The notes under the pieces were generated by a model that saw nothing but the letters and a program-made list of their open reading frames with translations, made no database searches and was not told the origin of the DNA. Positions 3,301 to 64,000 of a stretch of DNA of 64,000 nucleotides are shown here, in pieces. The stretch is from Octopus sinensis (Eukaryota), in the NCBI RefSeq assembly GCF_006345805.1, contig NC_043003.1, forward strand, positions 60,636,001 through 60,700,000, read 5' to 3'. A program made the translations under genes and the position numbers. Within the stretch, counting starts at the first letter, position 1; each line of letters starts with the position of its first letter.

Positions 3301-4561
3301 TAGTATCTCACAGAAGTATGTACCCGCCTAAAAATTTTCATTAAAATATCGAAGGAAATCAAACAAAAATTATACTGAATAAAATACATTATACATGCAA
3401 ACATTACACAAATTTTGAACACAAAACAATGAGCCTTTTCAAAGATATGAACGAAATATTAATTTTCAAAAGTTACAAAAATATGTACACCGTAAAGGAA
3501 ATTTTCTATATTCAATATTTTACCCACTTTTTTTTTTTTTTTTGCTAAATTCAGATATTGCTGATCATTTCAATTCTAATCAATTATTTCTTCTGGTATT
3601 TTTGCACTGGTCATTGTTATTGCATCTTCAGGAATTTTGATTTGTGTGCCGTGGTGAAAATCTTCTTCGTTGTGATTACAATGGCACCAAAAGGAAAAGA
3701 ATTGTCTGAAGATTTGAAGAAAATTATTTTTAATTTGCACAAGAATGGTTTAGGTTTCAAGATAATTAGCAAACGAATACATATGAGCGAAAGTAATTCA
3801 GAAGTACAAAGCTACTGGGTGGCTAAGCAATAAACATCATCCAGGTCGTCATTCTGTTTTAACTGCACGTGATATTCGCCACATCTAACGTTGCGTGATG
3901 GACGACAGGCGTCATATCGCTTCATCTTTGGCCCAAGAAATGTCTTCTGTATGTGGCAAGAGTGTATCCGCCCAAACAGCTCACCAAAGTTTGAACCAAT
4001 GTGGTCTTCATGGACACATTCCTCGTAGGAAGCCTCTCCTCACTACCAGGCATAAATCAAGTTGTCTTTCTTTTGCTAAAACCTGTGTGGGTAAGGGAAA
4101 GGATTTTGGAATAAAATTCTTTTTTTCTGACGAGACTAAAATCAACTTGTTTGGGTCAGATAGTATCAAACGAGTATGGTGGCGACCAGGTGAAGATAAT
4201 AGCTACAAATGCACCGTGCCTACCGTGAAACACGGCGGCGGAAGTGTTCTGCTTTGGGGATACATGAGTGCGGATGGTGTGGGAGGAGTCACATTTATTG
4301 AGAGAACAATATATTCAGGGCTTTATTGCGACATATTGCAGAAAACAATGTTGAAAAGCATCAAGGAACTAAGAAGTCGTTCAATTTTCCAACATGATAA
4401 TGACCCTAAATATACTTCAAAGATGACGACTAAAGTAAAGGTATTGCTTTGGCCTACCATGTTGCATGATTTAAATCCAACAGAACATATGTGGAGTGTT
4501 TTGAAAAAGAAGGTTGAGGAGAAAAAACCCTGCAATGCAACACAGTTGAAAGACATCATTC
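3301..4561 (+). mobile_element. Tc1-family DNA transposon, decayed, 3' end replaced by a SINE
   Basis: TA followed by TIR tagtatctcacagaagtatgtaccc, with an inner repeat near 3474-3491. N-terminus MAPKGKELSEDLKKIIFNLHKNGLGFK starts at 3681 and is frameshifted. DDE motifs FSDETK, QHDNDPK and NPTEHMW lie in ORF 3895-4638; D-E spacing is 28, implying a 6-aa deletion from DD34E. Confidence 0.9.
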
Positions 4562-4990
4562 GGAGGCGACGAGCTGGCAGAAACGTTAGCACGCCGGGCG
4601 AAATGCTTAGCGGTATTTCGTCTGCCATTACGTTGTGAGTTCTATTACCGCCGAGGTTGACTTTGCCTTTCATCCTTTCGGGGTCGATTAAATAAGTACC
4701 AGTTACGCACTGGGGTCGATATAATCGACTTAATCCGTTTGTCTGTCCTTGTTTGTCCTCTCTGTGTTTAGCCCCTTGTGGGTAGTAAAGAAATAGGTAT
4801 TTTGCCTGCCGTTACGTTCTGAGTTGAAATTCCGCCGAGGTCGACTTTGCCTTTCATCATTTCGGTGTCGATAAATTAAGCACCAGTTACGCACTGGAGT
4901 CGATGTAATCAACTTAATCCGTTTGTCTGTCCTTGTTTGTCCTCTCTGTGTTTAGCCCCTTGTGGGTAGTAAAGAAATAGGTATTTCGTC
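4562..4990 (+). mobile_element. tRNA-derived SINE family A, head-to-tail concatemer
   Basis: A-box-like ggcagaaacgttagc, B-box gagttc/tgagttgaaattcc, central gcctttcatcctttcggggtcgat, tail gccccttgtgggtagtaaagaaata. More than 20 related copies occur, e.g. near 2770-3016, 8400-8585, 10076-10400, 15460-15690, 20167-20545, 32050-32640, 33640-33850, 39670-40360, 45365-45570, 50363-51030 and 60820-61040. Confidence 0.85.
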
Positions 4991-12269: not shown

Positions 12270-12369
12270 NNNNNNNNNNNNNNNNNNNNNNNNNNNNNNN
12301 NNNNNNNNNNNNNNNNNNNNNNNNNNNNNNNNNNNNNNNNNNNNNNNNNNNNNNNNNNNNNNNNNNNNN
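12270..12369. other. Assembly gap (100 N)
   Basis: Run of n. Confidence 1.
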
Positions 12370-28191: not shown

Positions 28192-30126
28192 ATGAATCGC
28201 TACACACGATTTACGATACGGAAAAGATTATTTGTTATCGTACTTTGCCTAACTCTACCGTGGTACTACATATCCAGCTATCTCCAAAACTTCGACAAAT
28301 ATGAATCAGCAACGGGCCAATGTGTCTTGCCGAACATCGACCCGTTTGATGAATCCATAAAACAATTCATCCGTAAACTCAGTCCGTTACAATGTTCTAA
28401 GAACAACGATTTCAGTTACCTTGACAACAAAGGTCGAGTACATTTGAATTGGACAGCTGGTCGTCTTCTTGGATTTCACCGAAATCAGACATACTGTGTG
28501 TACAATGTTATCAACAGATACGATGATGATGATCATATCCTATACCAACCTGCCCGGACAGTGGTTTTTCCCATGGACATACCTTCTGACTTCTTCCGTA
28601 TTACATGCGCGGATGAATCTGGTTCCTCTTACAGCAATCTACACGCTCATATTTTCCCTACAAATATCACAAATGAAAAAGTTAAAAAAAGGTCAAACCC
28701 TCGGAAACAGTATAATGTTTTTATATTTGGGGTCGATTCTGTCTCCAGGTTAAACTGTTTGAGGATGCTTCCGAAAACCTATAAGTATCTCACCCAAGAA
28801 CTAGGGGCGTTTGATTTTCAAGGTTACACCAAAGTTGGAGATAACACTTTCCCGAACATGGTGCCATTACTCACAGGGATGCATCCTTATGAAGAGTCGT
28901 CGAAATTACCTTATGTAGATCCCTCATATCATTTTTATGATTCTTACCCTTTGTTATGGAAGAACTTTTCCGATGCCGGTTACATCACGATGTTTGCAGA
29001 GGACGAACCGTTACTGGGTATTTTTAACTATTTATCAAAAGGTTTTAACCAGCAACCAACTGATCATTATATGCGACCGTTTTGGCTTGCTTTGGATGAC
29101 ACTCACCCTAGCAATAAGTTTATCAGTCCCTTCTTGTTAATGCTGGAGAATCATGAAGTCCAGCTTAGTAAGTCTTCGACCCTTTGCTTCGGAAATATTC
29201 CCAAACATGTTGTCTTGATGAATTATTATAAATATTTCACAATGAAATACAAAAAAACACCCCGGTTTGGATATTCCTGGTTAACAGAACTTGGTCATAG
29301 TCATTTAAACATTGTACAGTTGGCTGACAACGATTTTGTTAATTTCTTAAAATCCTTAAAGGATAATGGTCAACTAGATAACAGTTTTTTGATTTTTATG
29401 AGTGATCATGGACACAGGTTCGATTCTATACGCCATACGTTAATTGGACGCATTGAAGAAAGAATGCCGCTTTTTTTAATGACAATACCCAAAGGTTTCA
29501 AAAGAGACTATCCAAGCGCAGCAGCTAATCTGCTCGCTAATACTAAAAGACTTACAAGTCCGTATGATCTCCATCAAACGTTGAAGGATATTCTGTCAAC
29601 TGATTACGAAAATAACAATGCAAAGAGATTAGCATCGACAAAAGGAGTGAGTTTATTTAGCAGAATCAGTAAGCAAAGGAGTTGTGCAGATGCTGGCATT
29701 AGTGAAAACTACTGTCCATGTTATAAAATAAAACCTTTAAACACAACAGAAAATAATGTGAGTCGCTCTATAGCCAAGTTTATTCTTGACAAAATTAATT
29801 CTCTTCTCCAACCCTGGAGAGGCATATGTAGCAATTTAAAACTGAACAGTATTAAAAGCAGCGATAAAATTGTCCCTCATGCAAGTCTAAGAGAAGAAAA
29901 TGGTTTCTTTGCGTCTTTATTGAAACACCAGGAACCGGAAGAGGGTACTTACACTGTTGTTGTTGAAACAGTCCCTGGTTTATCTTTGTTTGAAGCCTCA
30001 GTGAACTACAAAAGCAACACTGATATTAGTCTCTATGGAGAAATAAGCCGAATCAACCGATACGGTAACCAATCAGATTGTATAAGGAACAAACGGATGA
30101 AACTATACTGCTATTGTATCGCGTAA
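28192..30126 (+). CDS. DUF229 family protein (alkaline phosphatase/sulfatase superfamily, type II membrane), intact single coding exon
   Basis: 644-aa ORF with an N-terminal TM segment (FVIVLCLTLPWYYI) and DUF229-type motifs CVLPNIDPFD, NVFIFGVDSVSRLN, GYTKVGDNTFPNMVPLLTG, FMSDHGHRF, RLTSPYDLHQTL and CADAGISENYCPC. Preceded by a strong acceptor (ttcttcttttctttcag| ending 28148). Confidence 0.9.
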   Translation: MNRYTRFTIRKRLFVIVLCLTLPWYYISSYLQNFDKYESATGQCVLPNIDPFDESIKQFIRKLSPLQCSKNNDFSYLDNKGRVHLNWTAGRLLGFHRNQTYCVYNVINRYDDDDHILYQPARTVVFPMDIPSDFFRITCADESGSSYSNLHAHIFPTNITNEKVKKRSNPRKQYNVFIFGVDSVSRLNCLRMLPKTYKYLTQELGAFDFQGYTKVGDNTFPNMVPLLTGMHPYEESSKLPYVDPSYHFYDSYPLLWKNFSDAGYITMFAEDEPLLGIFNYLSKGFNQQPTDHYMRPFWLALDDTHPSNKFISPFLLMLENHEVQLSKSSTLCFGNIPKHVVLMNYYKYFTMKYKKTPRFGYSWLTELGHSHLNIVQLADNDFVNFLKSLKDNGQLDNSFLIFMSDHGHRFDSIRHTLIGRIEERMPLFLMTIPKGFKRDYPSAAANLLANTKRLTSPYDLHQTLKDILSTDYENNNAKRLASTKGVSLFSRISKQRSCADAGISENYCPCYKIKPLNTTENNVSRSIAKFILDKINSLLQPWRGICSNLKLNSIKSSDKIVPHASLREENGFFASLLKHQEPEEGTYTVVVETVPGLSLFEASVNYKSNTDISLYGEISRINRYGNQSDCIRNKRMKLYCYCIA

Positions 30127-48973: not shown

Positions 48974-49789
48974 TATATATAATATATATATACATAACTG
49001 AAAAAGGCACAAGGAAGTGTGACATGCAGCCAAAGCCGGTGTCAGTGGTAAGGTCCACAATCCACTCCAGTGCCAGTATAATAAGGCACGGAGACCCGAA
49101 CTCGGGATTGCAGGTACGAACCAAGTCATAGAAAGATATAATAAACAGAAGACATGTGATATTCAAAGCTTCGTAGGACATTCGCTCTTCTCAGAAAAAT
49201 GTCGAAATAATTACAAAGCAAATAGATATTATGCAATCATGCATTTCATTTCGTCAGTGTCCAGCTATACTTCGGCATTTTGTAGAAGCGAGCGTATATC
49301 CTAAAACACTTGTTTTCTGCTCATTATTTGTTTACACACACACACACACACACTCACAACACACACACACACACATTCGTATAGTTATATATATACATAC
49401 ACATATGTGTATGTATATGTATGTGTGTGTATTTATAACTCGACTTCATCGAATTAGTTTATAAAAGGCGCCAACAACATTTTTTATTAGTCAATTTAAT
49501 ATCATTGCCACTTTTCTGCTATATTCTTAATCATGTTAAGTCAATTTTTATATATTCCTTCAGCATCTACCAATTTAGATAAAATTGATACTTAAGTCAT
49601 TATATGTTTTCACCAATAAATATTCATAAGTTTCTAAAAGAAATTTGTCATATAATGAGAATAATGCAGTCATTTGTCTGTTGGCAAGAATTCAAGTCTC
49701 TTGATGTTTATATCAAATATTGTTTCTACATTTAACAAACTATAATATATCTTGTTAATTTAACAGAATTTCTAAAATTTTCAGAAAAT

Positions 49790-49881
49790 ATGAGCCAGTC
49801 AAATGAAGTGAATGAAATACTTCTGGGCACAAATTATCTATCATTAAAACCTAAATCGACAAACGGGTTTATCAATAAAAG
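49790..49881 (+). CDS. First recognisable coding exon of Met-like bHLH-PAS gene (MSQSNEVNEILLGTNYLSLKPKSTNGFINK-R)
   Basis: ATG at 49790 follows candidate acceptors ending 49766 and 49784. The exon ends AAAAG|GTAAGA in phase 2, matching the phase-2 acceptor of the bHLH exon and restoring Arg (AG|G). Confidence 0.7.
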
Positions 49882-51446
49882 GTAAGAAAATTCACATTTG
49901 GCTTCCACTCAATTTCTCTAGTCAAAACCAACACATCTATAAATCTACAATACAATTATTTAGCTTATATATGCTTGAGGAAATTTACCTCAAATAACAG
50001 CGCAACATTTTAAAATATGTGTAGGCACATTAAAAAAAACCCAGCTTAGATTTTATCTGAAAATAAGATAGCGTGTTCACAGTTGGAGCATCTTTGACTA
50101 TAAATCTGCTTCATAAGGGCTGACATAGAAGGATAAACAAAAACAAGTAAAATAAGACAACAGAATAGATGATGCTCAGTTGCAAACAGGCTGAGGTCGG
50201 TGGCGTATATATATATATTTTTAAATATATAAATACAGAAGTTCATAAGCATGAAGGTCAAATTAATTCCAAGCATCTTTGTTGTGTGTTTCGGCAATAC
50301 CCTTCCTTCTAAATGTCTTATTTCATTTAGTTACGTGGACCAGATTCCCAGTTTACATGCAAGGTGGCGAGCTGGCAGAATCGTTAGCACGCCGGGCGAA
50401 ATGTTTAGCGGTATTTCGTCAGCCGCTACGTTCTGAGTTCAAATTCTGCCGAGGTCGACTTTGCCTTTCATCCTTTCGGGGTCGATTAAATAAGTACCAG
50501 TTACGCACTGGTTTCGATGTAATCGACTTAGTCCCTTTGTCTGTCCTTGTTTGTCCCCTCTGTGTTTCGCCCCTTGTGGGCAGTAAAGAAATAGGTATTT
50601 CGTCTGCCGTTACGTTCTGAGTTCAAATTCCGCGTAAAGAAATATGTATTTCGTCTATCTTTACGTTCTGAGTTCAAGTTCCGCCGAGGTCGACTTTGTC
50701 TTTCATCCTTTCGGGGTGGATAAACTAAGTACCAGTTGTGTACTGGGTCGGGCTAATCGACTGGCCCCTCCCCAAAATTTCGGGCCTTGTCCCTAGAGTA
50801 GAAAAGAATATTATATGCAATAACAAAGTCGGCGAACTGACAGAGACGTTAGCACGCCGGGCAAAATGCTTAGCGGTATTTCGTTTGTCTTTACGTTCTG
50901 AGTTCAAATTCCGTCGAGGTCGACTTTGCCTTTCATCCTTTCGTAGTCGATAAATTAAGTATCAGTTGCGTACTGGGATCGATCTAATCGAATAGCCCTC
51001 TCCGCAAAAATTTCGAGCCTTGTGCCTACAGTAGAAAAGAATATCATATGAAATAACATAAGGTGAACCAAACAAATTGTTTGGTGGCGTTTCTTCGTGT
51101 TTTAGTTAATTACTTCGAATGCCGTCGCAGATGACTTTGCCTTCCATCCTTTCATGGTCAATAAAATAAACTACCTGGGGTCGTTGTAATGGACGTTCAC
51201 ACCATCACCACACCACAAAATTGTTGACCTTGTAACAAAATTAGAAAGAAACTATATAAGCGATATTCTGGTAATTTACTAACCAGAGATTTTTCCTTTT
51301 TTAGAATAGCGTTGTACCAAAATGAGGCAACGGCCCCGAGAAGCACTAAACTATTATTGAAATATGAAGAGAAAACGGAAACTTCGTGCAATACATGTGT
51401 GTGTGTGTGTGTGAGTGTGTGTATATATATGTATATACTCTTTAAT

Positions 51447-51479
<33 letters not shown>

Positions 51480-51719
51480 GTATATACTTTTTTACTCTTC
51501 TACTTGTTACAGTCATTTTACTGTGGCCATGCTGGAGCATCGCCTTTAGTCGAGCAAATCGACCCTAGGACTTATTCTTTGTAAGCCTAGTACTTATTCT
51601 ATCGGTCTCTTTTGCAGAACCGCTAAGCTACAGGGACGTAAACACACCAGCATCGGTTGTCAAGTGATGCTGGGGGGACAAACACCGACACACAACCCCG
51701 CCCCCCACACACTCATATA

Positions 51720-51774
<55 letters not shown>

Positions 51775-52221
51775 ACAACGGGCTTCTTTCACTTTCCGTG
51801 TACCAAATCCACTCACAAGGTTTTGGTCGGCCAGAAGCTATAGTAGAAGACACTTGCCCAAGGTGCCACGCAGTGGGACTGAACGCAGAACCATGTGGTT
51901 GGTAAGCAAGCTACTTACCACGCAGCCAATATTATATATATATATATTATATATATGATATATAATATATATATTATAATATATTTATGCATATATATTG
52001 AATCTTATTTCTAATTTATCATGAAATAAAACTGGTAGAAGCGGGTTAAGTCATAGAGGCAAAATCTTGACTTCAAATTTTGGCATGCTAACGATTCTGA
52101 CAACTCGCCGCCTTAACGAGATAAAATATTAAAATAATAGAACAGTAGTATCTTCTACTGAAGTTTAGTGAGATGACAATCCTAATGTTTTGGAACAAGT
52201 ATTCGTCTTCGAGAGGAAAAT

Positions 52222-52632
52222 CAGGAGGTTGTTGTATCCTAGCATATGTGCTGTTTCTTTTAGTTTTCGTATTTTCCAGTGGTCTTCTCTGTGTATTATT
52301 TTAACTTCATCCCACAGGTGGAGGTGGTCTTCATTTTTCCATTCATGATCAGCTGTACTCGATTTATCAATGTCTCCTCGTGTCACAGCTTTGCGATGTT
52401 CCTCTTCCCTTATTTTGAGGGGTGGCATGTTTCGCCTTTGTAGCTGCATGGGATGAAGCACACGCAGTTTTTGGTCATATTCCCTTCTATTGGTGGTTTT
52501 ACCCGAAGGAGATGTTTGCGAAGTGTTGTATTACTCTTGAATATCTCATTCGGATAAAACCACAAATAGAAGGAAATAGGACCAAAAATTGCGTGTACTC
52601 CATCCCATACAGCTGTGGTAGGTTATACAAAG
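52222..52632. mobile_element. Penelope GIY-YIG fragments in inverted arrangement
   Basis: Minus: EEEHRKAVTRGDIDKS...RKLKETAHMLGYNNLL. Plus (52546-52632): RIKPQIEGNRTKNCVYSIPYSCGRLYKGKT. Confidence 0.8.
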
Positions 52633-53419
52633 GCAAAACAGTTGAGGGTTACAGTCTGCTCGTGAAATAAACGAGCAAGTGGCTGAGCACTCCACAGAAA
52701 CGCGTACCCATAACGTGACACAGAATGTAACTAGGTTGGTCTTTTGAAATACAGGTAGCAACTTAAAATAAAATGTCTTGCTCAGAGACACTTCGTGCTG
52801 CCGGGAATCGAACTCAACCATACGATTGTGAGCCGAATACCCTACACACTAAGCCGGGCGCCTTCTCTTAGCGAGTATAGGGTTAAGATAGAAAAAGTGC
52901 GGGGTGTTTAGGGCAGAGTTGAAGAGTGAAGAGTTTTGCGTGCATAGGATTAAGACAGAGAATATATATTTTTAGGTTAATGGAAGGAGCGGGATGTTTT
53001 GTCTTGTGAAATAGAAAGGAGCCTTAGAAATTCATTGTCGTTTTTTATGTTGTTTTTGTTCTTTGGCGCCAAGTTAATACTTGTCTGAGAAAACAAAGCA
53101 AGCCCTTCTAAGCAAGAGTCATTTTTTAAACAAAATTACAAAAATGGTTATATAAACTATAGTTATAAACTATATGAAAATATAAAAAGTAATAATATAT
53201 TTAAAATAATATCAAATAAAGTACAGCGAAGGCATGGCTGTATGGCGAAGACCAAGTTGTTCTACGTTCACTCCTACTGCACGGCACTTTGGTAAAATTG
53301 TGATCCCCCAGCATGACTGCAGCCTCGAGTCAGAAGCATATAAAAGAATAAAAGAATATAGCTTAGGGCCGCGCAGTGGCTTGTGAATGAATTTGGTGGA
53401 CGGAAACAGTATAAAAAGC

Positions 53420-53467
<48 letters not shown>

Positions 53468-53612
53468 CGGAAGGTTTACGAAAATAAACAAAAGACGAAG
53501 GCAGGTGGAGTACAAACAAATAATGTATTAGTATGGCGCTCAAGCACATAAATGTGAAACAAGTTGGAAAAATAGTATTCGAATACCGGAGGTAGGGTAA
53601 TATGCTTTATTT

Positions 53613-54680
53613 TTAGGTTGTTCCGAAAATAATGGTCGCTCTAAGTGTTGTGCTTGAAAGCGCAATTTTATCATAGTATTTTAATTATATTTTAGGTAAA
53701 TTTTGACTTACTTAATTATTGATGTATGCTCTTTAATAATTTTCTACTTATTTCAGACAGGGAACATTCTTGAAGCATAGGCGCCCTTAATTGGGAACAT
53801 GACAAAAAAGGACCTTTAGTTACTTTTCCTTCATGAGTTCAAGCTTGGGTACAGTGCCTCTCAAGCTGCTGCCAATATCAACAGAGCATGGGGAGAGGAG
53901 TCCACCAATGATTGCACAGTGCGAAGGTGGTTTCAGAAATTCCGTAGTGGTGATGATAACCTTGAAGATGAAGAAGGTAGAGGACGGTCATGCAGTCTTG
54001 ACAATGAACAATTGAAAGCAATTGTTGAACAAAACACACGCCAAAGTGTCAGAGAAATGTCTTGGGCACTTGATGTCGGTATTACAATGGCCTCACGCAA
54101 TCTACAGAAGATTGGTAAGGTGAAAAAGCTCATGGTTACCGTATGAGCTCAATGAAAATCAAAAACGTTCGGTGTTATGAAGTGTGCTTGATCCTCTTTC
54201 TTCGAAACACCAATGATCCCTTTTTTTGACCGAATAGTCACTTGTGATGAAAAGTGGATCCCTTATGATAACTGTAAACGATCAGGTCGATGGCTTGATC
54301 TTGATGAGTTCCCCAAACATTTCCCAAAGCCAATGTTGCATCAGCAAAAGATTATGGTGACTGTCTGGTGGTCTGCAATTGGTGTTGTCCATTACAGCTT
54401 TCTGGAAGGCACTTAGAGTATTACAGCAAAGGTCTACTGCAATCAACTCGCTGAAATGCATGCTCACTTATAAAAAATGAGACTTGCATTTGCGAATCGG
54501 CGTGGCCCGATTCTGTTCCACGATAGTGTCAAGCCACGTGTTGCAAAAATGGCACTGCAGAAACTCACAGACTTGGAATACGAGATTTTACCACACCCAC
54601 CATATTCTCCTGATCTTTCACCCACTAACTACCATTGTTTGAAGCATTTAAACGCGTTTTTAAGTGATAAAGCTTTAAGG
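53613..54680 (+). mobile_element. mariner (Hsmar1/cecropia-like) pseudogenised transposase, in intron of Met-like gene
   Basis: TIR ttaggttgttccgaaaataatgg, ATG at 53799, motifs TVRRWFQKFRSGD, IVTCDEKWI, LFHDSVKP and HPPYSPDLSPTNY. Contains stops and frameshifts; 3' end is lost. Confidence 0.9.
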
Positions 54681-54919
54681 TCCACACCTGTGTTTGGCGC
54701 CACATTACTTGACAACCAGTGCTGGTGTGTTTACGTCCCTGTAACTTAACGGTTCGGCAGAAGGGGCCGATATAATAAGTACCAGACTTAAAAGTAACAA
54801 GTGGAGTCGATCTGTTCGACTAAATCCTTGAATGGAGAGCCCCAGCATTGATGCATTCCAATGATTGAAGCAAGTAAAAGATGAAAGACATACATAAAGT
54901 TTCATAGTAATGTATGAAA

Positions 54920-55110
54920 TTCGCCATGCTTGACCACTAAATCTACAAATTTTTTAATTATTTCTCTGCTTAGTTCTCTTATTCCTTTCTGTTGAAGAGC
55001 ATAGGCTCGAAACGTAAAAGACATTCATTTTCTTGAGCGTCAAACTAATACACCTGCGTCTTGTTCATACACCTGTCTCCGTCTTTTGTCTTTCCATAAA
55101 TTTCAACTAT
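54920..55110 (+). mobile_element. Penelope-derived non-autonomous repeat with hammerhead-like motif (family P)
   Basis: cttt-ctgttga-a-gagc-atag-gctc-gaaa-cgta-aaag at 54985-55020. Related copies at about 11161-11370, 27770-27920, 46730-46935, 48010-48240 (-) and 53460-53545 (-). Confidence 0.6.
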
Positions 55111-55342
55111 AAAATGGGTACCAATATTTCTGTGTCATTATTTTTAATATACAGAGTCTCATCTACGACAGAAAATATTAAGATAATTGAATAATTGCTA
55201 AGTGTATCAGTTTTCTGGGTTAAAATATTATTTAGGTCAACTTATGCTTCCATTTAAAACATGTAATATAAAAATACTGACCCTATCCAATTGTTATATA
55301 AACTACTTCAAAAACATAATTTTGTTTAATTTTCTTTTGCAG

Positions 55343-55500
55343 GTCATGGCGTAATTACAGCGAGAAGTTACGCCGAGATAAACTAAATTGTTATTTTGAG
55401 GAACTTGCTAAATGCGTCCCTCTTGTAGCGAATTCTCCACAACGCCTGAACAAGACTAGTATATTGCGACTATCGTTAAGCTATTTAAAATTTCTTCTTG
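55343..55500 (+). CDS. Met: bHLH exon of a bHLH-PAS transcription factor, Methoprene-tolerant/gce-like (alternatives: Clock/ARNTL-like)
   Basis: Acceptor ttttcttttgcag|G and donor G|gtacgt. The 158 nt encode SWRNYSEKLRRDKLNCYFEELAKCVPLVANSPQRLNKTSILRLSLSYLKFLL, matching the remembered Met pattern RNxxEKxRRDKLNxYIxELAxxVPxVAxSxxRxDKTSILRL better than Clock or BMAL. Symbol is provisional. Confidence 0.85.
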
Positions 55501-56211
55501 GTACGTTAATCAAGTTTGGTTTCGTTTAAAATTTTACTATTTCTAAATGACAAAAAGGCATTTGACATAAAAACAAAATTGAGCGATTTTTCAGTAGTAA
55601 AATTTACAAAAGATTGATAGAATAGTTATTTTTGTAGAAACTGATAGATACATGCAAACATTCTATGAAACACTTTGGATGTTTGTTATTTTCTCGCTAC
55701 GTTCGGAATGAGTGATTGTATATCAACACAAAAGTAAAACTTACAATTGCAAAAAGTAAAACGCTGAATTTAATGCAATCTACTAAATACGACAGGATAA
55801 CTGCTGCTATTCTTTCTTTATTTATGGCTATATATTAACAAGTCACCAAGAATCCAAGGCTCCATCTGTACAAAAGACTAAAAGTCAAGTTAGGGACGGT
55901 ATATCCAATGTAGTGCGAAAAATATATGATTAATTAATATTATTTATGCAGTGATGAAAAGGTATGAATGATTAATATAAATTTAATCTGAACTTATTGC
56001 TAATCTGATGATTAGTGAGAAGACTATATATTTCTAAAGTTGTCTACAGAGGCTAAAACACGTTCGAAGTTGTCGCCCGTTATTATCAAAACCAGATTAT
56101 ACATTTTTCATTGAATTTGTGGTTTCGTCTTTTCATTACATAAATATACTAATTAGCCAATTAATCAATTACATATTTATCCTCTCTACATTAATATCCA
56201 TCTATCTATCA

Positions 56212-56287
<76 letters not shown>

Positions 56288-56410
56288 GTATGTCTGTCTG
56301 TCTGTCTGTCTGTCTGCCTGTCTGTCTGTTTGTCTGTCTCTCTTTCTGACTGACTATCTATCTGTCTGTCTGTCTATCCATCTTTCTCTCTATGTATCTA
56401 TCTATTTTCC

Positions 56411-56463
<53 letters not shown>

Positions 56464-56859
56464 GCTATCTGTCTCTCTGTCTTTGTCTGTCTGTCTGTCT
56501 CTCTCTCTGTCTCTCTCTCTCTATGTGCCTGTGGATGCATTATATATATTTCATATGTACATGAATGTCTACGTGTATCTACGTTGTAATGTACGTGTAA
56601 TCGTTCTCGTTTTAATTTAATGTTAATTTTGATTCTGTAGTGTGTGAATCAAGGAATCGCTTTCTCTCTCCAAGAACCTATATTCAGCCATAATTTGCTC
56701 CAGACAGATTTGTACGTATCCTATTGCTCCAATAATAATAGGAATGATGAGAAAAGTGTATGTTGGGTACTAGATTTGCAAAGCCTTACCATAGATGTTC
56801 TCTTTCTCATGTGTTTTTCTTCCCACATTAATGTCTAGAGGGCTGCTCCACAACAGAAC

Positions 56860-56931
56860 GGGCATATGGTGTACTGGTTAAGAGCGCAGACTACTAACCT
56901 CAAGATTCCGAGTTCGATTCCAGGCAGTGAT

Positions 56932-57008
<77 letters not shown>

Positions 57009-57196
57009 CAACTTCTAAAAATACCTTAGGAATGAGAACCCAGGTTCGAAATTTCCCCCAAGACACCTGATGAAGGCTGGAGGGTATATCAGCCGAAATG
57101 TTGTGTTAACAACAAGATGAGGACAAATATCTGTTAATTGTAAATAATAATATAATAATAATGTACATAATTCCTCATCTCTTAAATATAGAACTG
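56860..57196 (+). mobile_element. tRNA-headed, hammerhead-containing SINE-like derivative of the Penelope 3' end
   Basis: A/B boxes at 56860-56921, (AAT)n, then hammerhead gacac-CTGATGA-a-ggctg/cagcc-GAAA-t-gtt-gtgtt at 57062-57107. Confidence 0.65.
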
Positions 57197-57380
57197 AATT
57201 ATTTACTTGTAGTCTCACACAACAATATCTAGCAGGCTGTGTTTTAACTTGGTAGGTTCGAAACGGTAAAATTCATGAAACCAAAACCGCACCACTCCAT
57301 GTACTCAAAGACACACAGAGCTATGCCCCTTAGCGCAATGAAAAAACGCAGTATGAATAAGGCATTTGAATAACAATGAA

Positions 57381-57418
<38 letters not shown>

Positions 57419-57578
57419 CAATGTCTTCAGATTTTGGCACAAGGCCACTAATTCCTGGGAAGAAGTAAATCGATTATATCAACCCCAGTACTTAACTGGT
57501 ACCCCAAAAGGATAAAAGGCAACGTCGAGTTCAAATTCAGCCGAGGTCTGCCAGCTCACCGCCTTGATGATGATAATC

Positions 57579-57616
<38 letters not shown>

Positions 57617-58402
57617 TAATAATAATAATAATAATAACTATATGGTTACAATGCTAGGAGCACCTGGAATGACCAAAAACTGCTGATAAATGGTACTAGC
57701 ACCACCCTGAGGCTGTAACTGAAGGAGAAAATGCAACGATTCTTTGGGACTTCCCAGTATGTACTAGTCTGTGGTTGTCTGAACCAGCATGGGGAAGCTG
57801 ATGACCTCTCCTGTTTGAAGGTTGTAATGGTAATAGTTTTGTGTGTCATCAGCTTACCATGCTGGTTCAGACACCCACATACTAGTTTCAGGGTATTTGC
57901 CCTTTATCAATGTGGAGTAGTCGAACTCAGCAGGTTACTTAATTGTAATATGCTTAATGTGTGACAGGCTCTGGTGCACAAGCGTTTATAAAAGGCTGAA
58001 AATAAAACATTGGACAACTTCTACTAGAATTGGACCCGATCTACTAGAATTCCAATTCACTTAAAATTCTTTTCTCAGGCACAAATTTATGATTTTGTTT
58101 TTCTACTCACGGATCAAACGTATTTGTGCTACACATAATATTCCAACTGTTTTTCAACAAAAGTTTTTAGCACCTCCATAAAATCTCCTCTCCTTACCCC
58201 ACGTAGTTTTAAGGCCGCGAAGTGGTAGACTTTTCGGAGTGGTTCAATAATGTAACCAGCCTAGTACTGAGTTGGGAAGAGTCGATGTGATCGCCTTGCT
58301 ACCTTCCGTCAAAATTTCTAGCCTTGTACTAGAATTAGAAAGCACTATTACTTTAAAATAAATACAAAAGAGATGAAACATGGATCTGCTATTGGATTAT
58401 GA

Positions 58403-58403
58403 T

Positions 58404-58456
<53 letters not shown>

Positions 58457-58477
58457 TTATAATTATTATTATTATTA

Positions 58478-58535
<58 letters not shown>
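58403..58535. repeat. Compound trinucleotide microsatellite (ACT)n-(ATT)n; representative of very dense (TA)n, (CA)n, (GA)n, (TATC)n, (TATG)n and (AAT)n arrays across the window
   Basis: Direct inspection. Confidence 0.95.
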
Positions 58536-58538
<3 letters not shown>

Positions 58539-58744
58539 TAGTTTTATTTTTATAACGTGCTTTCACTTCACTACCGAGCGCAGCTCTGTGTGCCTTGGGT
58601 ATGTGCTGTGATTTGTTGTGATGCTCTGATGGTTACTGTATTGATAGAGTTCTGCGTAGGATGTGTGCAGTGCCTAGTAGAGCAATTTTCTGTATGTTAT
58701 TTGTTTGTAAGTCCTGGTGTTTTTGTTATGTATTTTTCTGAATA

Positions 58745-58793
<49 letters not shown>

Positions 58794-60336
58794 GAAATAA
58801 GCATGAGATAGGTTTGATTACCTCCACGAGCAAAGAATAAGGAGTGGATTAATCGTAGAATGAATGTAAATACAAAAAATATCAGCAATAACTTAAAAAG
58901 TAGCATATGCCTTTTCTCAAGATAGAGCTGAAAGACAGATAACAGGAAAGAAAAAAGAAATATCCGTGTGTAGTTATCTGCGAGTTATTATAAAAGTTGA
59001 AATAGGAAGAGAGTAAGTATGTGATTTCTGAGGTGGTGAGATTAGAGTCAATCGCACAAAATACAAAAAAAAAAAAGAAAAAAATGAACGAAAAGTAAGC
59101 AGGCAGCATCGGTGCATATGTTGGCCAATGTGTGAATACAGTCTATGATAATGCACATACCAAAATTCTAGATTGCATCCAAAATAAAATGCTATCTCAC
59201 TAATCGGTAACACTTAATAAAATGGTCTGACATTTGACCAACATAAGGGCTGTCCCCCAACTAATGTCTCATCTACCGGCACCATACTGACCCTCTGCTC
59301 GTTGAGTGGGACTTTGCCACTCGACTCACTCGTACTTCTCCTCTACTCATTTACTTTGCTTCCCCGCCACACACTAATCAATATAACCAGATCTTTCTTC
59401 TCGGTTTACTAACCCTCTAGAATTCTCTCCCTGTCCAGGTTCTTTTCTTTCTGCTGTCGCCAAATTACAGTTGTTCAAAGAGAATACTAGTTACATAGAT
59501 TAATATCTGGTCTCGGGTAGCATGTAAATGTCAGAGGGTGCAGTCCCTTTCCCTAATTATCTTTTATTGTTTATTGTTAAAGTCATTGAGTTGCGGCTGT
59601 GCTGGGTGTGGGGGGCTCCTTGAAGGGTTTAGTCGACCACAATGCATATCTTTAAAATCTGGTTCTTATTCAATCGTTCTATTCTTTTTTTCTTGAACCT
59701 CTAAGTTACAGGGACGAAAATGAACTAACACCGGTTGCCAAGCGGTGGTAGGGACAAACACAGACACACAAACATATACACACCCATATATATATACGAC
59801 GGGCTTCTTTCAGTTTCCATCTTGCAAATCCACTCAAGGCTTTGGTCGACCCGAGGCTACAGTAGAACACACTTGCCGAAAGTGCCACGCAGTGGGACTG
59901 AACCCGGAACAATGTGGTTGGTAACCAAGGTACTTATCACACAGCCACTCGTACGGCTATACATATATATATATATATATACAGACATACCAAGGGCTTC
60001 CGCAGATTTTCTATCAACCATATTCACTCATAATGCATTGGTGGGCCCGGGGCTATAATAAAAAGAAAAATACACTTGCCCAAGTTGCCGTGCAATGGGA
60101 TTAAAACTGAGACAACGTGGTCGCCAAACGGATTTCTTAACTACACAACCAGCGCCTATGCTTAAGACCAACCCACTAAAGAAAAACGATTATGATAATT
60201 TAGTCCCAGCAACAAGAATGCTAATTGATCTGACCTTGAAAATAAAAGATTAACAATGAATGATACAAAATCTCACTTACTATACTAAATTTTGCGTAAA
60301 TTCTTTTTCTGTTTTTTTTTTTTTTTTTTTATATAG

Positions 60337-60410
60337 GTTTGAAAAGAAAAGGTTTATTACCTAAAGAGAAATGTAAAACTGAACTGTTACAGCCTGGTAA
60401 TGTAGAAGAG
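60337..60410 (+). CDS. Third exon (bHLH to PAS-A linker) of Met-like gene: GLKRKGLLPKEKCKTELLQPGNVEE
   Basis: Long poly-T tract plus atatag| acceptor. 74 nt, phase 1 in (matches previous donor), phase 0 out at GAG|GTAACT, no stops. A phase-0 intron just before PAS-A is typical of Clock/BMAL-type genes. Confidence 0.7.
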
Positions 60411-61097
60411 GTAACTTGGTTTTATAATTTTCGTTAAAACCTTAGCGTTTTACAGATCGTGAGTAATAATTTTGATAAATTTACATTTAGTCATGTTGTG
60501 AGTAAAGAGGTTAAAAAAATCAACAAGTACTCCGAATTGAAAGTGGAAATAGCACGACTGTATGGAATGAGAGAGGGTAATGTAAAAGTGATGCCAGTTG
60601 TGATTGGAGCGTTGGGCTCAATCCCATTGAAACTTCAAGACTAGTTAAGGCAATTGGAAGTCCCATGCAACATTGATGTCTTGCAAAAAGCAGCCTTATT
60701 GGGCACAGCGCACATCTTAAGGAACGTATTATCTGTCTGAGGCCCTTGTAACTTTACAGATGACTAAAGACTCCGCTGCATTTTTACCTACACTTTGTTA
60801 CGAAGGAAAATTAATAATAACAATAGTTTCAAATTTTGCCGCAAGAGCAGTCATTTTGGGGGAAGGGATGTGTCGATTATATCGACCCCAGTGCTCAACT
60901 GGTACTTAATCTATCAACCCTGAAAGGATGAAAGGCAAAGTCGACCTCAGCGGAATTTGAACTTAGAACGTAGCGACGGGCGAAGCACCACTAAGCATTT
61001 CGACCAGTGCGCTAACAATACTGCTAGCTCACCGCCTGTAATAATAATAACAACAACAACAACAAAAACAACAACAACAACAACAATAATAATAAAT

Positions 61098-61260
61098 CCC
61101 AAAATCTAATCAGTTCGTGCCAGGCACGAGGTCAAACATCCCTGAAGGTTTCATCCGAATCCATCCAGCGGTTCTTGAGATACTTGTCCACGGACAAACA
61201 AACAAACAAACAAACAAACACGACTGAAAACAATGCCTCTGCCTTAGCTAAGGCGGATAT
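61098..61260 (+). mobile_element. Helentron/DINE-1-like (HINE) 3' portion
   Basis: ccaaaatctaatcag...ccatccagcggttcttgagat...(ACAA)n...gaaaacaatgcctc plus a subterminal hairpin gccttagctaaggc. Confidence 0.5.
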
Positions 61261-61263
61261 ACA

Positions 61264-61294
<31 letters not shown>

Positions 61295-61630
61295 TAATAA
61301 TAATATAATAATAATAATAATAATAATAATATAATAATAATAATAATACTGTCTTTCTGACCTCGCTTCCCTCGAGTGTAGACGGCTTTCCTGTGTCTCT
61401 CTCTGCCGTTCTCAATAAAAAATATTCAGACAAATACATAACAAAAACACCAGGACTTACAAACACACATAACATACAGAAAATTGCACTACTAGGCACT
61501 GCACACATCCTACGCAGAACACTTTCCATACAATAACCATCAGAGCATCACAACAAATCACAGCACATACCTAAGGCACACAGAGTTGCGCTCGGTAGTG
61601 AAGTGAAAGCACGCTATAAAAAGAAAACTA

Positions 61631-61692
<62 letters not shown>

Positions 61693-62010
61693 TAATAATA
61701 ATAATAATAATATTGAAACCTATTTGAAGATGATACCAGACTTACCATCCCTACAGGAAATGCAAAAATCGTGTTAACTGGAACGACTCATGTACTGAGA
61801 AGAGCATTATCGCTGTGAAAACAACATCAATTCATGATTTTATTTATCTATTATTTTTTTAAATACATAGTTTACCTGTAAATTTGCATGTGTAATCTGG
61901 GAATGCACACAATGAGTTTCTGTGTCGTAGGTGTACGGAAAACACTCGGCGAGAAATGGAAGAAAAGTTGAAGAAGGAAAAAAATAATAATAACAATAAT
62001 AATAATAATA

Positions 62011-62053
<43 letters not shown>

Positions 62054-62055
<2 letters not shown>

Positions 62056-62652
62056 AGGAATATATTCACAGACATGACAGAGTTGGAACCTTCATACATT
62101 GGAAGCTATGCCAACATTATGGAATAACAACAGAAAAAAGATGGTATAGGCACACACCAGAAAAGGTCACAGAAAACGAGAAAGCAACCATACTCTGGGA
62201 TATGCCGATACACACAGATAGAGAAATTAAGGCCAACAGACCAGATATAGTTGTCAGAGATCATGAAGAAAAAAAATGCTTTCTAATTGATGTATCAATA
62301 CCGGCAGATGACAACGTGTCTCTAAAAGAAATGGAGAAACTCTCAAAATACAAATACCTGGAAATAGAGGTAACTAGAATGTGGAATCTGAAAACAGAAA
62401 CAATTCCTATCATAGTAGGTGCATTAGGCATGATAAAAAAATATTCAGAAAAATGCATAACAAAAACACCAGGACTTACAAACACATATAACATACAGAA
62501 AATTGCACTACTAGGCACTGCACACATCCTACGCAGAACACTTTCCATACAATAACCATCAGAGCATCACAACAAATCACAGCACATACCCAAGGCACAC
62601 AGAGCTGCGCTCGGTAGTGAAGTGAAAGCACGCTATAAAAATAAAACTACCG
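62054..62652 (+). mobile_element. 5'-truncated R4/Dong-like non-LTR element with restriction-like endonuclease, in (TAA)n
   Basis: YIHRHDRV...WY.HTPEKV...ILWD...RPDIVV...LIDVSIP...EKLSKY (PD-(D/E)xK RLE), flanked by (AAT)n on both sides. Shorter copies at 58536-58746 (-) and 61416-61633 (+); diverged relatives at about 57640-57755, 60450-60740 and 61715-61820. Confidence 0.85.
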
Positions 62653-62836
62653 AATAATATAATAATAATAATAATATAATAATAATAATAATAATAATAA
62701 TATAATAATAGCCATGCACAAGGTAGAACCAATAATTATAAAATGTATAAGACACTATGAATAAATGGCAAACAGTGCTACAGCTCCAAACAAAAGAGGT
62801 TTCTGGTTTCCTTTTCTTCTACCTTACTGTCTCTCC

Positions 62837-62878
<42 letters not shown>

Positions 62879-63516
62879 ATTCTTCATTCTTTCTGGTTTT
62901 CTCTACAACCATTCCATCCCCCCCTCTCTCTCTTACTCCTCCTCTGTCCCGTCGCTCACCACCGACGAGAAAGCTACTGTCTTTCTGACCTCGCTTCCCT
63001 CGAGTGTAGACGGCTTTTCTGTGTCTCTCTCTGCCGTTCTCAACAAGCGTTCGTAATATTTTCTCTCGTTTGGCTTAACAGCCCTCATTGTCTGTGTTAC
63101 TGTTATTCTCCTTGTCCTGTCTTTTACTGTTTATAATTTGTCCTGTCTTTACTGTCCTGTTTTTGTTACCTTTTTTACTCCTCGGCAAAAAAATCTCAAG
63201 TTTTATTTAATTTGCTTTTTGCGGGAAGAAAAGTTTCGATGTAGTCGTGTCTCGCCTTGACCATCGAAACGCGGAGTAGATGAAACAGAGGTGACTGAAG
63301 AAGGGTAATTTTCCTTGTGTTGTATGCCCTGTACTCTATTTTTTCGTTGTTTAAAAGAAATGTCCATTTCCTTGGTTTTGTGTTTATGTTTTCGTTTCTC
63401 ATTGTGTTCGACGTTTTTTTGGTGTCCTATACCCATATATGCATGTATATATACATGTAGATGTAGGTACGTACATATATGTATGTATTTATGCATATGT
63501 TTTATTTATTAATTTG

Positions 63517-63558
<42 letters not shown>

Positions 63559-64000
63559 ACATATATATATATATACGACGGACTTCTTTCTGTTTCCCAT
63601 TACCAAATTTCCCCACATGGCTATGGTCGGTCCGAGGTTTTATTAGAAGACACTTGCCCAAGGTACCACGCAATGAAACTGAACCCGGAACCATGTCGAT
63701 GGAAAATGAGCTTCTTAACTCCCCCCCCCCATATATATATATATCTATATGTATACATTTATGACAGTCCTTTACACGGTTTCTGTCTACAAAGTTCATT
63801 CGCTAGGTATTGGCCCAGACTGGGGCCATTGTAGAAGACACTTCCTCAAAGTACAGCATTGTAGAAAAGAACCCGAAACCACATGGCTGCCAAAGGAGCT
63901 TCGTAATCGCGCATGGTCACGCCTGTAGACAAATGTTACATATTGAATAATAGGGACCTCGATAAAATCTAATCTTGACTAAACAACAACAACGAGGGCT

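What the first reader, a model, noticed from the sequence alone, without database searches (positions are those of the whole stretch)
49790..60410. Hidden spliced Met-like (juvenile-hormone-receptor-like) bHLH-PAS gene missed by the ORF track
Seen: three short exons with canonical splice sites and matching phases (2, 1, then 0) give one open frame, MSQ...NKR|SWRNYSEKLRRDKLNCYFEELAKCVPLVANSPQRLNKTSILRLSLSYLKFLL|GLKRKGLLPKEKCKTELLQPGNVEE, across transposon-filled introns of 5461 and 4836 bp. Known: Met/Gce is the arthropod JH receptor, and methyl farnesoate acts as a reproductive brain hormone in the annelid Platynereis. Inference: this may be a cephalopod Met orthologue, pointing to poorly described sesquiterpenoid-type signalling in a mollusc whose maturation and death are optic-gland controlled.
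Basis: partly seen in the sequence, partly recalled or inferred. Interest (0 to 1): 0.85.

Follow-up and report, generated by a model that had tools for sequence, protein, structure and literature searches.

The report
Octopus Met-like bHLH-PAS gene start
The three short exons are real and form the start of an already annotated Octopus sinensis gene for a compact 398-residue bHLH-PAS transcription factor that groups with the juvenile-hormone-receptor (Met) family rather than with HIF, but nothing yet shows that it binds a hormone.

Summary
Exons 49790-49881, 55343-55500 and 60337-60410 (+) have AG/GT boundaries and end phases 2, 1, 0.

The window is 100% identical to Octopus sinensis chromosome CM016865.1. 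The peptide equals the first 108 residues of a public 398-residue protein named "hypoxia-inducible factor 1-alpha-like". So the gene is not hidden from public annotation.

The full gene has 11 coding exons over 44 kb. Exon 4, where PAS-A starts, begins 130 bp past the window end. The architecture is bHLH, PAS-A, PAS-B, with no C-terminal tail.

In my neighbour-joining trees the cephalopod proteins:
- group with the mollusc/nemertean Met-like clade, which includes the published "Lottia Met", in 72-88% of bootstraps;
- fall with all Met-like proteins against HIF, SIM, AHR, NPAS4, ARNT, BMAL and CLOCK in 70-91%;
- group with HIF in 0%.

"Met-like" is therefore supported, and the public HIF name looks wrong.

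Receptor function is untested. Only 6 of 15 insect JH-pocket positions are identical, no better than human HIF-2α (7 of 15). PAS-B also carries a cephalopod-only 14-residue insertion. Mollusc Met orthologues were reported in 2016. I rate this a new member of a known kind, of moderate interest.

The parts
49790..49881 (+). Coding exon 1 (92 nt, ATG to donor GT, end phase 2). It encodes the 30-residue N-terminal leader MSQSNEVNEILLGTNYLSLKPKSTNGFINK plus two bases of the Arg31 codon (R31).
   Evidence: Searches show the sequence, splice sites and phase. One search shows it is exon 1 of the rebuilt O. sinensis gene. One search shows Argonauta has an exon of the same length with the same start Met (42% identity).
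49766..49789 (+). Open-frame stretch upstream of the ATG, after a possible acceptor (ttaacAG|AATTTC). This is likely 5'UTR, and may be the junction with an upstream non-coding exon.
   Evidence: The O. vulgaris model CAI9725818.1 splices into this point from inside the upstream DUF229 ORF. The frame is open from 49736.
49882..55342 (+). Intron 1 (5461 bp, GT...AG), rich in interspersed repeats and microsatellites.
   Evidence: One search gives the boundaries. One search shows 41% is repeated elsewhere locally. Searches show repeat families and a degraded mariner-like HTH fragment that stays below Pfam cut-offs.
55343..55500 (+). Coding exon 2 (158 nt, end phase 1). It holds the whole bHLH domain, with basic region R-N-x-x-E-K-x-R-R, helix 1, loop and helix 2.
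   Evidence: Pfam HLH E = 2e-11. The exon is 93% identical in Argonauta and 78% identical in the P0003 transcript. The AlphaFold model shows helices 30-55 and 68-87 at pLDDT 80-89.
55501..60336 (+). Intron 2 (4836 bp, GT...AG). It contains a (TATC)n array and repeat copies.
60337..60410 (+). Coding exon 3 (74 nt, end phase 0). It encodes the basic linker between bHLH and PAS-A, GLKRKGLLPKEKCKTELLQPGNVEE.
   Evidence: It is 77% identical in Argonauta. The GLKRK/GLKKK motif is shared with the mollusc Met-like proteins.
60411..64000 (+). First 3590 bp of intron 3. The intron runs 129 bp beyond the window, and exon 4 (start of PAS-A) lies at window-equivalent 64130-64219.
   Evidence: window coordinate = L001 coordinate + 39789. 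No PAS-coding sequence is found inside the window.

Best explanation
These are the first three coding exons of an 11-exon, 44-kb Octopus sinensis gene for a compact 398-residue bHLH-PAS transcription factor.

**Shown.**
- Exon 2 carries an intact basic region and helix-loop-helix.
- The downstream exons, outside the window, carry PAS-A and PAS-B.
- The protein ends about 35 residues after PAS-B, with no recognisable activation domain.
- Relatives with intact reading frames exist in O. vulgaris, in Argonauta and in a further, unidentified source known only from a transcript assembly.
- In distance trees the proteins sit in the protostome Met/Gce-like clade, next to the mollusc and nemertean members.

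**Inferred.**
- Like other bHLH-PAS proteins, it binds an E-box-type site as a heterodimer with a second bHLH-PAS protein, such as a Tai/SRC-type or ARNT-type partner.
- Because it has no tail of its own, it would rely on that partner for activation, or else act as a competitor.
- Its PAS-B could hold a small lipophilic ligand.
- Whether that ligand is a sesquiterpenoid such as methyl farnesoate is an open guess, not a finding.
For: - **Gene model.** The splice sites, phases and open frame are. The peptide is identical to P0159. The window and the chromosome are identical over 24,211 of 24,211 overlapping bases. The 11-exon rebuild translates exactly to P0159.
- **Domains.** Pfam finds HLH at 31-82, PAS at 108-183 and PAS_3/PAS_11 at 245-364. 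[quoted passage not shown] Foldseek finds only bHLH-PAS structures, at E about 1e-22.
- **Real and expressed.** A 1332-nt assembly contig from run SRR27666087 carries an uninterrupted 366-residue homologue. It has in-frame stops upstream of the ATG and a 3'UTR after the stop.
- **Family.**
  - The top non-cephalopod matches to the 108-residue peptide are Met-family proteins.
  - Full-length phmmer scores are 160 bits to Haliotis, 148 to Lottia Met and 131 to Palaemon. They are 101 to HIF-1α, 80 to BMAL1 and 59 to CLOCK.
  - In the NJ bootstraps, cephalopods plus lophotrochozoan Met-like proteins get 72-88%. Met-like against all other families gets 70-91%. Cephalopods with HIF get 0%.
  - PAS-B alone gives 70% for the first grouping.
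Against: - **Tree limits.** The tree is neighbour-joining only. The outgroup families are represented by human sequences plus a few fish or cnidarian ones, not by mollusc paralogues. Distances are near saturation and the cephalopod branch is long. In 3-6% of bootstraps the cephalopods fall outside the Met clade. bHLH alone and PAS-A alone resolve nothing.
- **Pocket.** Only 6 of 15 insect JH-pocket positions are identical, against 7 of 15 for human HIF-2α. The TcMet I262 position is Phe, and the I262F mutation hinders JH III binding in Tribolium.
- **Departures from known Mets.** PAS-B carries a 14-residue insertion, and the protein lacks the long C-terminal region of most Mets.
- **Missing data.** I examined no octopus RNA-seq, no expression data and no binding data. 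I could not search the octopus proteome for a second, more canonical Met.
Confidence: 0.62

Rival explanations
1. It is a lineage-specific, fast-evolving cephalopod bHLH-PAS gene with no true orthology to Met. On this reading, its position next to the Met-like proteins comes from a Met-like bHLH plus long-branch effects.
For: - 3-6% of bootstraps place the cephalopods on the side of the other families.
- PAS-A is equally distant from all families, and AHR is nominally the closest.
- Against solved structures, the best full-length match is HIF-1α, not BMAL/CLOCK as for Lottia Met.
- The protein is short, and PAS-B carries an insertion encoded by a microexon.
Against: - bHLH and PAS-B each independently lie closest to the lophotrochozoan Met-like proteins.
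- Full-length scores to mollusc Met-like proteins exceed those to any other family by 50-100 bits.
- Motifs are shared with the mollusc clade: GLK(R/K)K after helix 2 and D-x-W-T-x-K-P-K-x-I at the end of PAS-B.
- No other cephalopod Met-like protein appeared among the relatives found.
Confidence: 0.2
2. It is a HIF-1α paralogue, as the public name "hypoxia-inducible factor 1-alpha-like" says, and works in oxygen sensing.
For: The best match among solved structures is HIF-1α (E = 9e-28, 100.7 bits), followed by HIF-2α. There is a weak, sub-threshold hit to the Pfam bHLH_HIF1A model.
Against: - 0% of bootstraps join it to HIF/SIM, while human HIF1A, EPAS1 and SIM1 group together at 96%.
- The protein ends at residue 398. 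It has no oxygen-dependent degradation region or C-terminal activation domain, and no such Pfam hit.
- The same sub-threshold bHLH_HIF1A hit occurs in Lottia Met and beetle Met.
- The PDB holds no Met structure, so HIF coming first there says little.
Confidence: 0.03
3. It is a circadian Clock or BMAL/Cycle-type (or ARNT-type) gene.
For: For the 108-residue peptide, the best solved-structure match is the BMAL1 bHLH (E = 4e-7). Cnidarian Clock proteins are the next-nearest bHLH after Met.
Against: In the tree, BMAL1, ARNT and fish BMAL1 group together at 100%, and CLOCK groups with cnidarian Clock. All of these lie across the 70-91% split from the cephalopod proteins. Full-length scores are 80 bits to BMAL1 and 59 to CLOCK, against 148-160 to mollusc Met-like proteins.
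Confidence: 0.03
4. It is a decaying pseudogene or an annotation artefact built from chance open frames.
For: Exons 1 and 3 are short and have no domain hit of their own. The O. vulgaris model is chimeric with the neighbouring DUF229 gene, and the Argonauta model lacks exons 4 and 6.
Against: - Full reading frames are intact in O. sinensis (398 residues) and in the transcript-derived P0003 (366 residues, complete CDS on one contig).
- All three exons, the start codon and the exon lengths are conserved in Argonauta.
- The predicted fold is confident.
Confidence: 0.02

Closest known systems
Lophotrochozoan Met-like proteins (Lottia gigantea XP_009046608.1, called Met by Schenk et al. 2016; relatives in Haliotis, Patella, Pecten, Mytilus, Mya, chiton and Lineus)
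   Same: - The order is the same: bHLH, PAS-A, PAS-B.
- They give the highest full-length scores, 133-160 bits.
- They are the sister or containing clade in 72-88% of bootstraps.
- They share the GLK(R/K)K linker and the W-T-x-K-P-K motif at the end of PAS-B.
- At the insect-pocket positions L450, Y465 and T330 they share His, Phe and Ser.
   Different: - The octopus protein has 398 residues, against 600-1100, and has no C-terminal tail.
- It carries a 14-residue insertion in PAS-B, encoded by a 42-nt microexon.
- It keeps Tyr at the TcMet Y252 position, where most mollusc proteins have Trp.
- It keeps Val at V280, where the gastropod proteins and most of the bivalve ones have a polar or charged residue.
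- Its bHLH is nearer to arthropod Met (about 73% identity to a beetle Met over 37 residues, by my hand count) than to Lottia Met (about 62%).
Arthropod Methoprene-tolerant / Germ-cell-expressed (Met/Gce), the juvenile hormone and methyl farnesoate receptor
   Same: - Both are bHLH-PAS proteins and fall on the same side of the split from all other families (70-91%).
- The bHLH is very similar: EKLRRDKLN..ELAK.VP.VA.S..R..KTSILRL.
- Six pocket positions are kept: the equivalents of TcMet Y252, V280 and V297, and of Aedes H405, F437 and N499.
   Different: - Of the 8 Tribolium residues tied to JH III binding, 3 are identical.
- The other five read T254S, I262F, L318S, T330S and C347A.
- Ligand binding, Tai partnering and Kr-h1 induction are all untested.
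- The protein has no C-terminal region.
- It has the PAS-B insertion.
HIF-1α / HIF-2α (the source of the public name)
   Same: The domain order is the same. HIF-1α is the best match among solved structures, at 23-25% identity, and the predicted fold superposes on it.
   Different: It never groups with HIF in the trees. It has no degradation or activation domains. Its scores are lower than to Met-like proteins.
Short bHLH-PAS regulators without an activation domain (this comparison rests on my own knowledge, for example AHRR and the HIF-3α IPAS isoform)
   Same: A bHLH-PAS protein that stops soon after the PAS region could titrate partners or occupy sites without activating.
   Different: There is no sequence affinity to AHRR (56.6 bits). 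Nothing here tests repression.

Membership tests
bHLH-PAS transcription factors | A basic helix-loop-helix domain with a DNA-contacting basic region | tested here: met
   Pfam HLH E = 2e-11 on the window peptide. R34, E38, K39, R41 and R42 are invariant across the 15-sequence alignment. The helices are modelled at pLDDT 80-89.
bHLH-PAS transcription factors | Two PAS domains (PAS-A and PAS-B) after the bHLH | tested here: met
   Both lie outside the window but in the same gene. Pfam finds PAS at 108-183 and PAS_3/PAS_11 at 245-364 in P0159. These are encoded by exons 4-11.
Met/Gce (juvenile hormone receptor family) | Phylogenetic placement inside the Met clade, apart from Clock, BMAL/ARNT, HIF/Sim, AHR and NPAS4 | tested here: met
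   NJ trees with 300-500 bootstraps and three distance corrections give 70-91% for Met-like against the other families. They give 72-88% for cephalopods with lophotrochozoan Met-like proteins. Support is moderate, the method is distance-only, and the outgroups are mostly human.
Met/Gce (juvenile hormone receptor family) | A conserved hydrophobic JH/MF pocket in PAS-B (TcMet Y252, T254, I262, V280, V297, L318, T330, C347; further Aedes positions) | tested here: inconclusive
   The octopus protein reads Y S F V V S S A at the eight Tribolium positions, so 3 are identical. Across all 15 positions 6 are identical, against 7 of 15 for human HIF-2α. Other mollusc Met-like proteins also diverge at these positions (residue list from PMC9392760).
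Met/Gce (juvenile hormone receptor family) | Binds JH or methyl farnesoate with high affinity | not testable with these tools
   This needs a binding assay on recombinant PAS-B.
Met/Gce (juvenile hormone receptor family) | Ligand-dependent dimerisation with Taiman/SRC and induction of Kr-h1 | not testable with these tools
   This needs two-hybrid or reporter assays. I did not look for octopus Tai or Kr-h1.
HIF-α | Placement with HIF/Sima in a tree | tested here: not met
   0% of bootstraps join it to HIF/SIM. Human HIF1A, EPAS1 and SIM1 group at 96% without it.
HIF-α | An oxygen-dependent degradation region and a C-terminal activation domain | tested here: not met
   The protein ends at residue 398, and Pfam finds nothing beyond HLH and PAS.
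Clock / BMAL-Cycle / ARNT | Placement within those clades | tested here: not met
   These groups form their own clusters (100% for BMAL/ARNT) across the split from the cephalopod proteins. Full-length scores are 59-80 bits, against 148-160 to mollusc Met-like proteins.

The most novel reading that the evidence does not exclude
[quoted passage not shown] On this reading it still senses a sesquiterpenoid such as methyl farnesoate or farnesoic acid. It would take part in the switch to reproduction and post-reproductive death, extending the annelid and arthropod system to cephalopods.
Probability: 0.1. Interest if true: 0.8.

Novelty: new member of a known kind. Interest (0 to 1): 0.4.

Why it matters
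If the placement holds, cephalopods have one compact member of the Met family. This gives a concrete candidate for testing whether sesquiterpenoid hormones act in cephalopods.

It would also correct a misleading public name. "HIF-1-alpha-like" could send hypoxia or expression studies the wrong way.

The short length and the PAS-B microexon insertion make the protein a useful natural variant for asking which parts of Met are needed for ligand sensing.

The gene itself is already in public annotation, and mollusc Met orthologues were reported in 2016. The advance is therefore one of classification, not discovery.

Tried and rejected
- **Word-indexed protein search with the 108-residue peptide** found nothing, although an identical protein is in the collection. 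This is an index limit, not absence.
- **The same search with a 15-sequence profile** returned only 6 proteins and no further cephalopod relatives. I could not survey the octopus proteome for a second Met-like gene.
- **tblastn of full-length relatives against the window** found no PAS-coding sequence in 60411-64000. Exon 4 lies 130 bp past the window end.
- **Pfam on ORFs inside the introns** gave only sub-threshold HTH hits. I do not endorse "transposon-filled" beyond repeat content.
- **The first tree attempt** with Biopython distance code timed out. I replaced it with my own NJ and bootstrap code.
- **Single-domain trees** for bHLH and PAS-A were unresolved.
- **Outgroup sequences.** I checked them by one concatenated search against the PDB. 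Seven of the eight matched their own chains end to end at about 2.2 bits per residue. SIM1 has no solved structure and is unverified.
- **Literature searches** for Met in octopus or cephalopods, and for LOC115214099, found no report.
- **Structure search** confirms the fold but cannot separate the families.

Full report
**1. The observation**

- Exon 1 is 49790-49881 (92 nt), exon 2 is 55343-55500 (158 nt) and exon 3 is 60337-60410 (74 nt).
- Exons 2 and 3 follow an AG preceded by a pyrimidine tract. All three exons are followed by GT.
- End phases are 2, 1, 0, and the introns are 5461 and 4836 bp.
- The product is one open 108-codon frame.
- Each exon sits in a short stop-to-stop frame of 49, 69 and 45 codons. 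This explains why an ORF list shows nothing here.

Residues 31-82 match Pfam HLH at E = 2e-11, so exon 2 is not a chance frame.

**2. Source, and whether the gene is "hidden"**

A search of 1.84 billion representative proteins found a 285-residue Octopus vulgaris protein that carries the peptide contiguously at 99% identity. It also found a 319-residue Argonauta hians protein at 76% and a 366-residue protein from transcript assemblies at 62%.

A follow-up search returned a 398-residue Octopus sinensis protein, P0159, named "hypoxia-inducible factor 1-alpha-like".

The chromosome stretch that encodes it is GCA_006345805.1, CM016865.1:60675790-60739964, held here as L001. It is identical to the window at all 24,211 overlapping bases, with window coordinate = L001 coordinate + 39789. 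The window is therefore O. sinensis, and public annotation already joins these exons.

**3. The whole gene**

I rebuilt the gene from the chromosome under the rule that the joined exons must translate to P0159. The result is 11 coding exons and 1197 nt including the stop. All acceptors are AG. All donors are GT except one GC.

Exon 4 encodes the start of PAS-A (LIGGFLLVITETGNLIYTSKYIKRYLGYNQ). It lies at window-equivalent 64130-64219, which is 130 bp beyond the window. This is why no PAS sequence is found inside the window.

Domain and structure evidence:
- Pfam finds HLH at 31-82, PAS at 108-183 and PAS_3/PAS_11 at 245-364, and nothing after that.
- Confidence is low only in the leader, the linker, surface loops and the tail.
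- Foldseek finds only bHLH-PAS structures.

**4. Is it a working gene?**

- Exon 1 has the same length and start codon in Argonauta (42% identity). Exon 2 is 93% identical and exon 3 is 77% identical.
- A 1332-nt contig assembled from run SRR27666087 holds an uninterrupted 366-residue homologue. It has stop codons upstream of its ATG and a 3'UTR after its stop.
- That contig shows the short protein is a real, spliced, complete message in its source organism. I could not identify that organism.
- The O. vulgaris model is a chimera. Its first 134 residues are window 28765-29166, which lies inside an intronless 644-residue DUF229 ORF. It then joins 24 nt upstream of the ATG.
- The O. vulgaris and Argonauta models skip exon 4, and the Argonauta model also lacks exon 6. 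Both skips are in frame. These may be isoforms or annotation gaps.

**5. Which family?**

*Similarity scores.* For the window peptide, the best non-cephalopod hits are Met-family proteins.
- One is a Coccinella protein that UniRef calls "Juvenile hormone methoprene-tolerant".
- Several are insect and crustacean relatives.
- One is XP_009046608.1, the same accession Schenk et al. 2016 list as "Lottia Met".

Full-length phmmer scores for P0159:

| Target | Bits |
|---|---|
| Haliotis Met-like | 160 |
| Sinanodonta Met-like | 157 |
| Patella Met-like | 152 |
| Lottia Met | 148 |
| Palaemon Met-like | 131 |
| HIF-1α | 101 |
| AHR | 81 |
| BMAL1 | 80 |
| CLOCK | 59 |

No Met structure appeared in any of the PDB searches, which explains the automated HIF name.

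*Tree.* I combined 45 Met-like, Clock-like and BMAL-like proteins from the search with human HIF1A, EPAS1, ARNT, BMAL1, CLOCK, AHR, NPAS4 and SIM1. All but SIM1 matched their own chains end to end at about 2.2 bits per residue.

On 338 trimmed columns, NJ with 300-500 bootstraps and three distance corrections gave:

| Grouping | Bootstrap support |
|---|---|
| Cephalopods + mollusc/nemertean Met-like clade | 72-88% |
| All Met-like against all other families | 70-91% |
| Cephalopods with HIF/SIM | 0% |
| Cephalopods on the non-Met side | 3-6% |

Clade labels fit taxonomy: gastropods, bivalves, a chiton and a nemertean on one side, and insects, crustaceans and spiders on another. Cnidarian Clock groups with CLOCK.

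PAS-B alone gives 70% for cephalopods plus lophotrochozoan Met-like proteins. bHLH alone and PAS-A alone are unresolved, although the bHLH is nearest to Met by mean distance.

*Limits.* The method is distance-only. The distances are near saturation and the cephalopod branch is long. No mollusc paralogues of the other families are included.

**6. Is it a hormone receptor?**

Residues reported to matter for JH III binding are Tribolium T254, V280, V297, T330, C347, I262 and L318, plus Y252. A set of Aedes positions adds to these (PMC9392760).

I mapped them through a beetle Met whose spacing matches the published numbering.
- The arthropod proteins keep most of these positions.
- The mollusc Met-like proteins, Lottia Met included, differ at many of them.
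- O. sinensis reads Y, S, H, F, F, V, F, V, H, I, F, S, S, A, N, against insect Y, T, H, I, I, V, F, V, L, S, Y, L, T, C, N.
- That is 6 of 15 identical. Human HIF-2α scores 7 of 15.
- The I262 position is Phe. I262F hinders binding in Tribolium, although a stick-insect Met-like protein (Bacillus rossius, P0009) also has Phe there.

The cephalopod proteins also share a 13-14 residue insertion between the second strand and the first helix of PAS-B. In O. sinensis it is encoded by a 42-nt exon and is modelled with low confidence.

The sequence therefore neither supports nor excludes sesquiterpenoid binding. The basic region is intact, so DNA binding as a heterodimer is the reasonable expectation. 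With no C-terminal tail, activation would have to come from the partner.

**7. What is known**

- A snail study reported methyl-farnesoate-responsive genes (PMC8848322).
- My searches found no paper that describes a cephalopod Met or this locus.

**8. Verdict**

The claims that the gene is hidden and that it points to sesquiterpenoid control of octopus maturation are not supported by anything I could test.

This is a new, somewhat unusual member of a known family that carries a misleading public name. Interest is moderate.

Noticed in passing
window 28192-30126 (+): An intronless 644-residue ORF matches Pfam DUF229 at E = 3.5e-132, with a weaker sulfatase-fold hit. It lies 19.7 kb upstream of the bHLH-PAS gene on the same strand and looks like an intact single-exon gene.
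   Followed up: partly
window 28765-29166 joined to 49766: The O. vulgaris model CAI9725818.1 fuses 134 residues of the DUF229 ORF to the bHLH-PAS gene. It uses a GTAAGT donor inside the DUF229 ORF and an acceptor 24 nt upstream of the ATG. This is either a chimeric prediction or a read-through transcript.
   Followed up: partly
window 3895-4638 (+): A 247-residue ORF carries Tc3-type HTH and DDE_3 transposase domains, so it is a Tc1/mariner-type element.
   Followed up: no
window 12270-12369: A run of 100 N marks an assembly gap.
   Followed up: no
L001 39104-39145 (window-equivalent 78893-78934): A 42-nt exon encodes a 14-residue insertion in PAS-B. The insertion is present in the three cephalopod proteins and absent from the 12 other Met-like proteins aligned. 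The structure model gives it low confidence.
   Followed up: partly
L001 24341-24430 and 32625-32765 (exons 4 and 6): The O. vulgaris and Argonauta models omit exon 4 (90 nt, in frame). The Argonauta model also omits exon 6 (141 nt, in frame). Either omission would gut PAS-A. These are isoforms or annotation gaps.
   Followed up: no
window 56195-56482 and 61634-61712: There is a long (TATC)n array of 72 copies in intron 2, and an (AAT)n array of 26 copies in intron 3. Many further AAT/ATT-rich runs lie nearby.
   Followed up: no
window 58479-58704, 61417-61690 and 62436-62659: Three copies of a repeat of about 225 nt are 95-97% identical, one of them inverted, which suggests a recently active short element. 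A nearby 199-residue ORF (61956-62555) has no significant Pfam hit.
   Followed up: no
The word-indexed protein search failed to return a protein whose first 108 residues are identical to the query. "No hit" from that tool should not be read as absence.
   Followed up: yes
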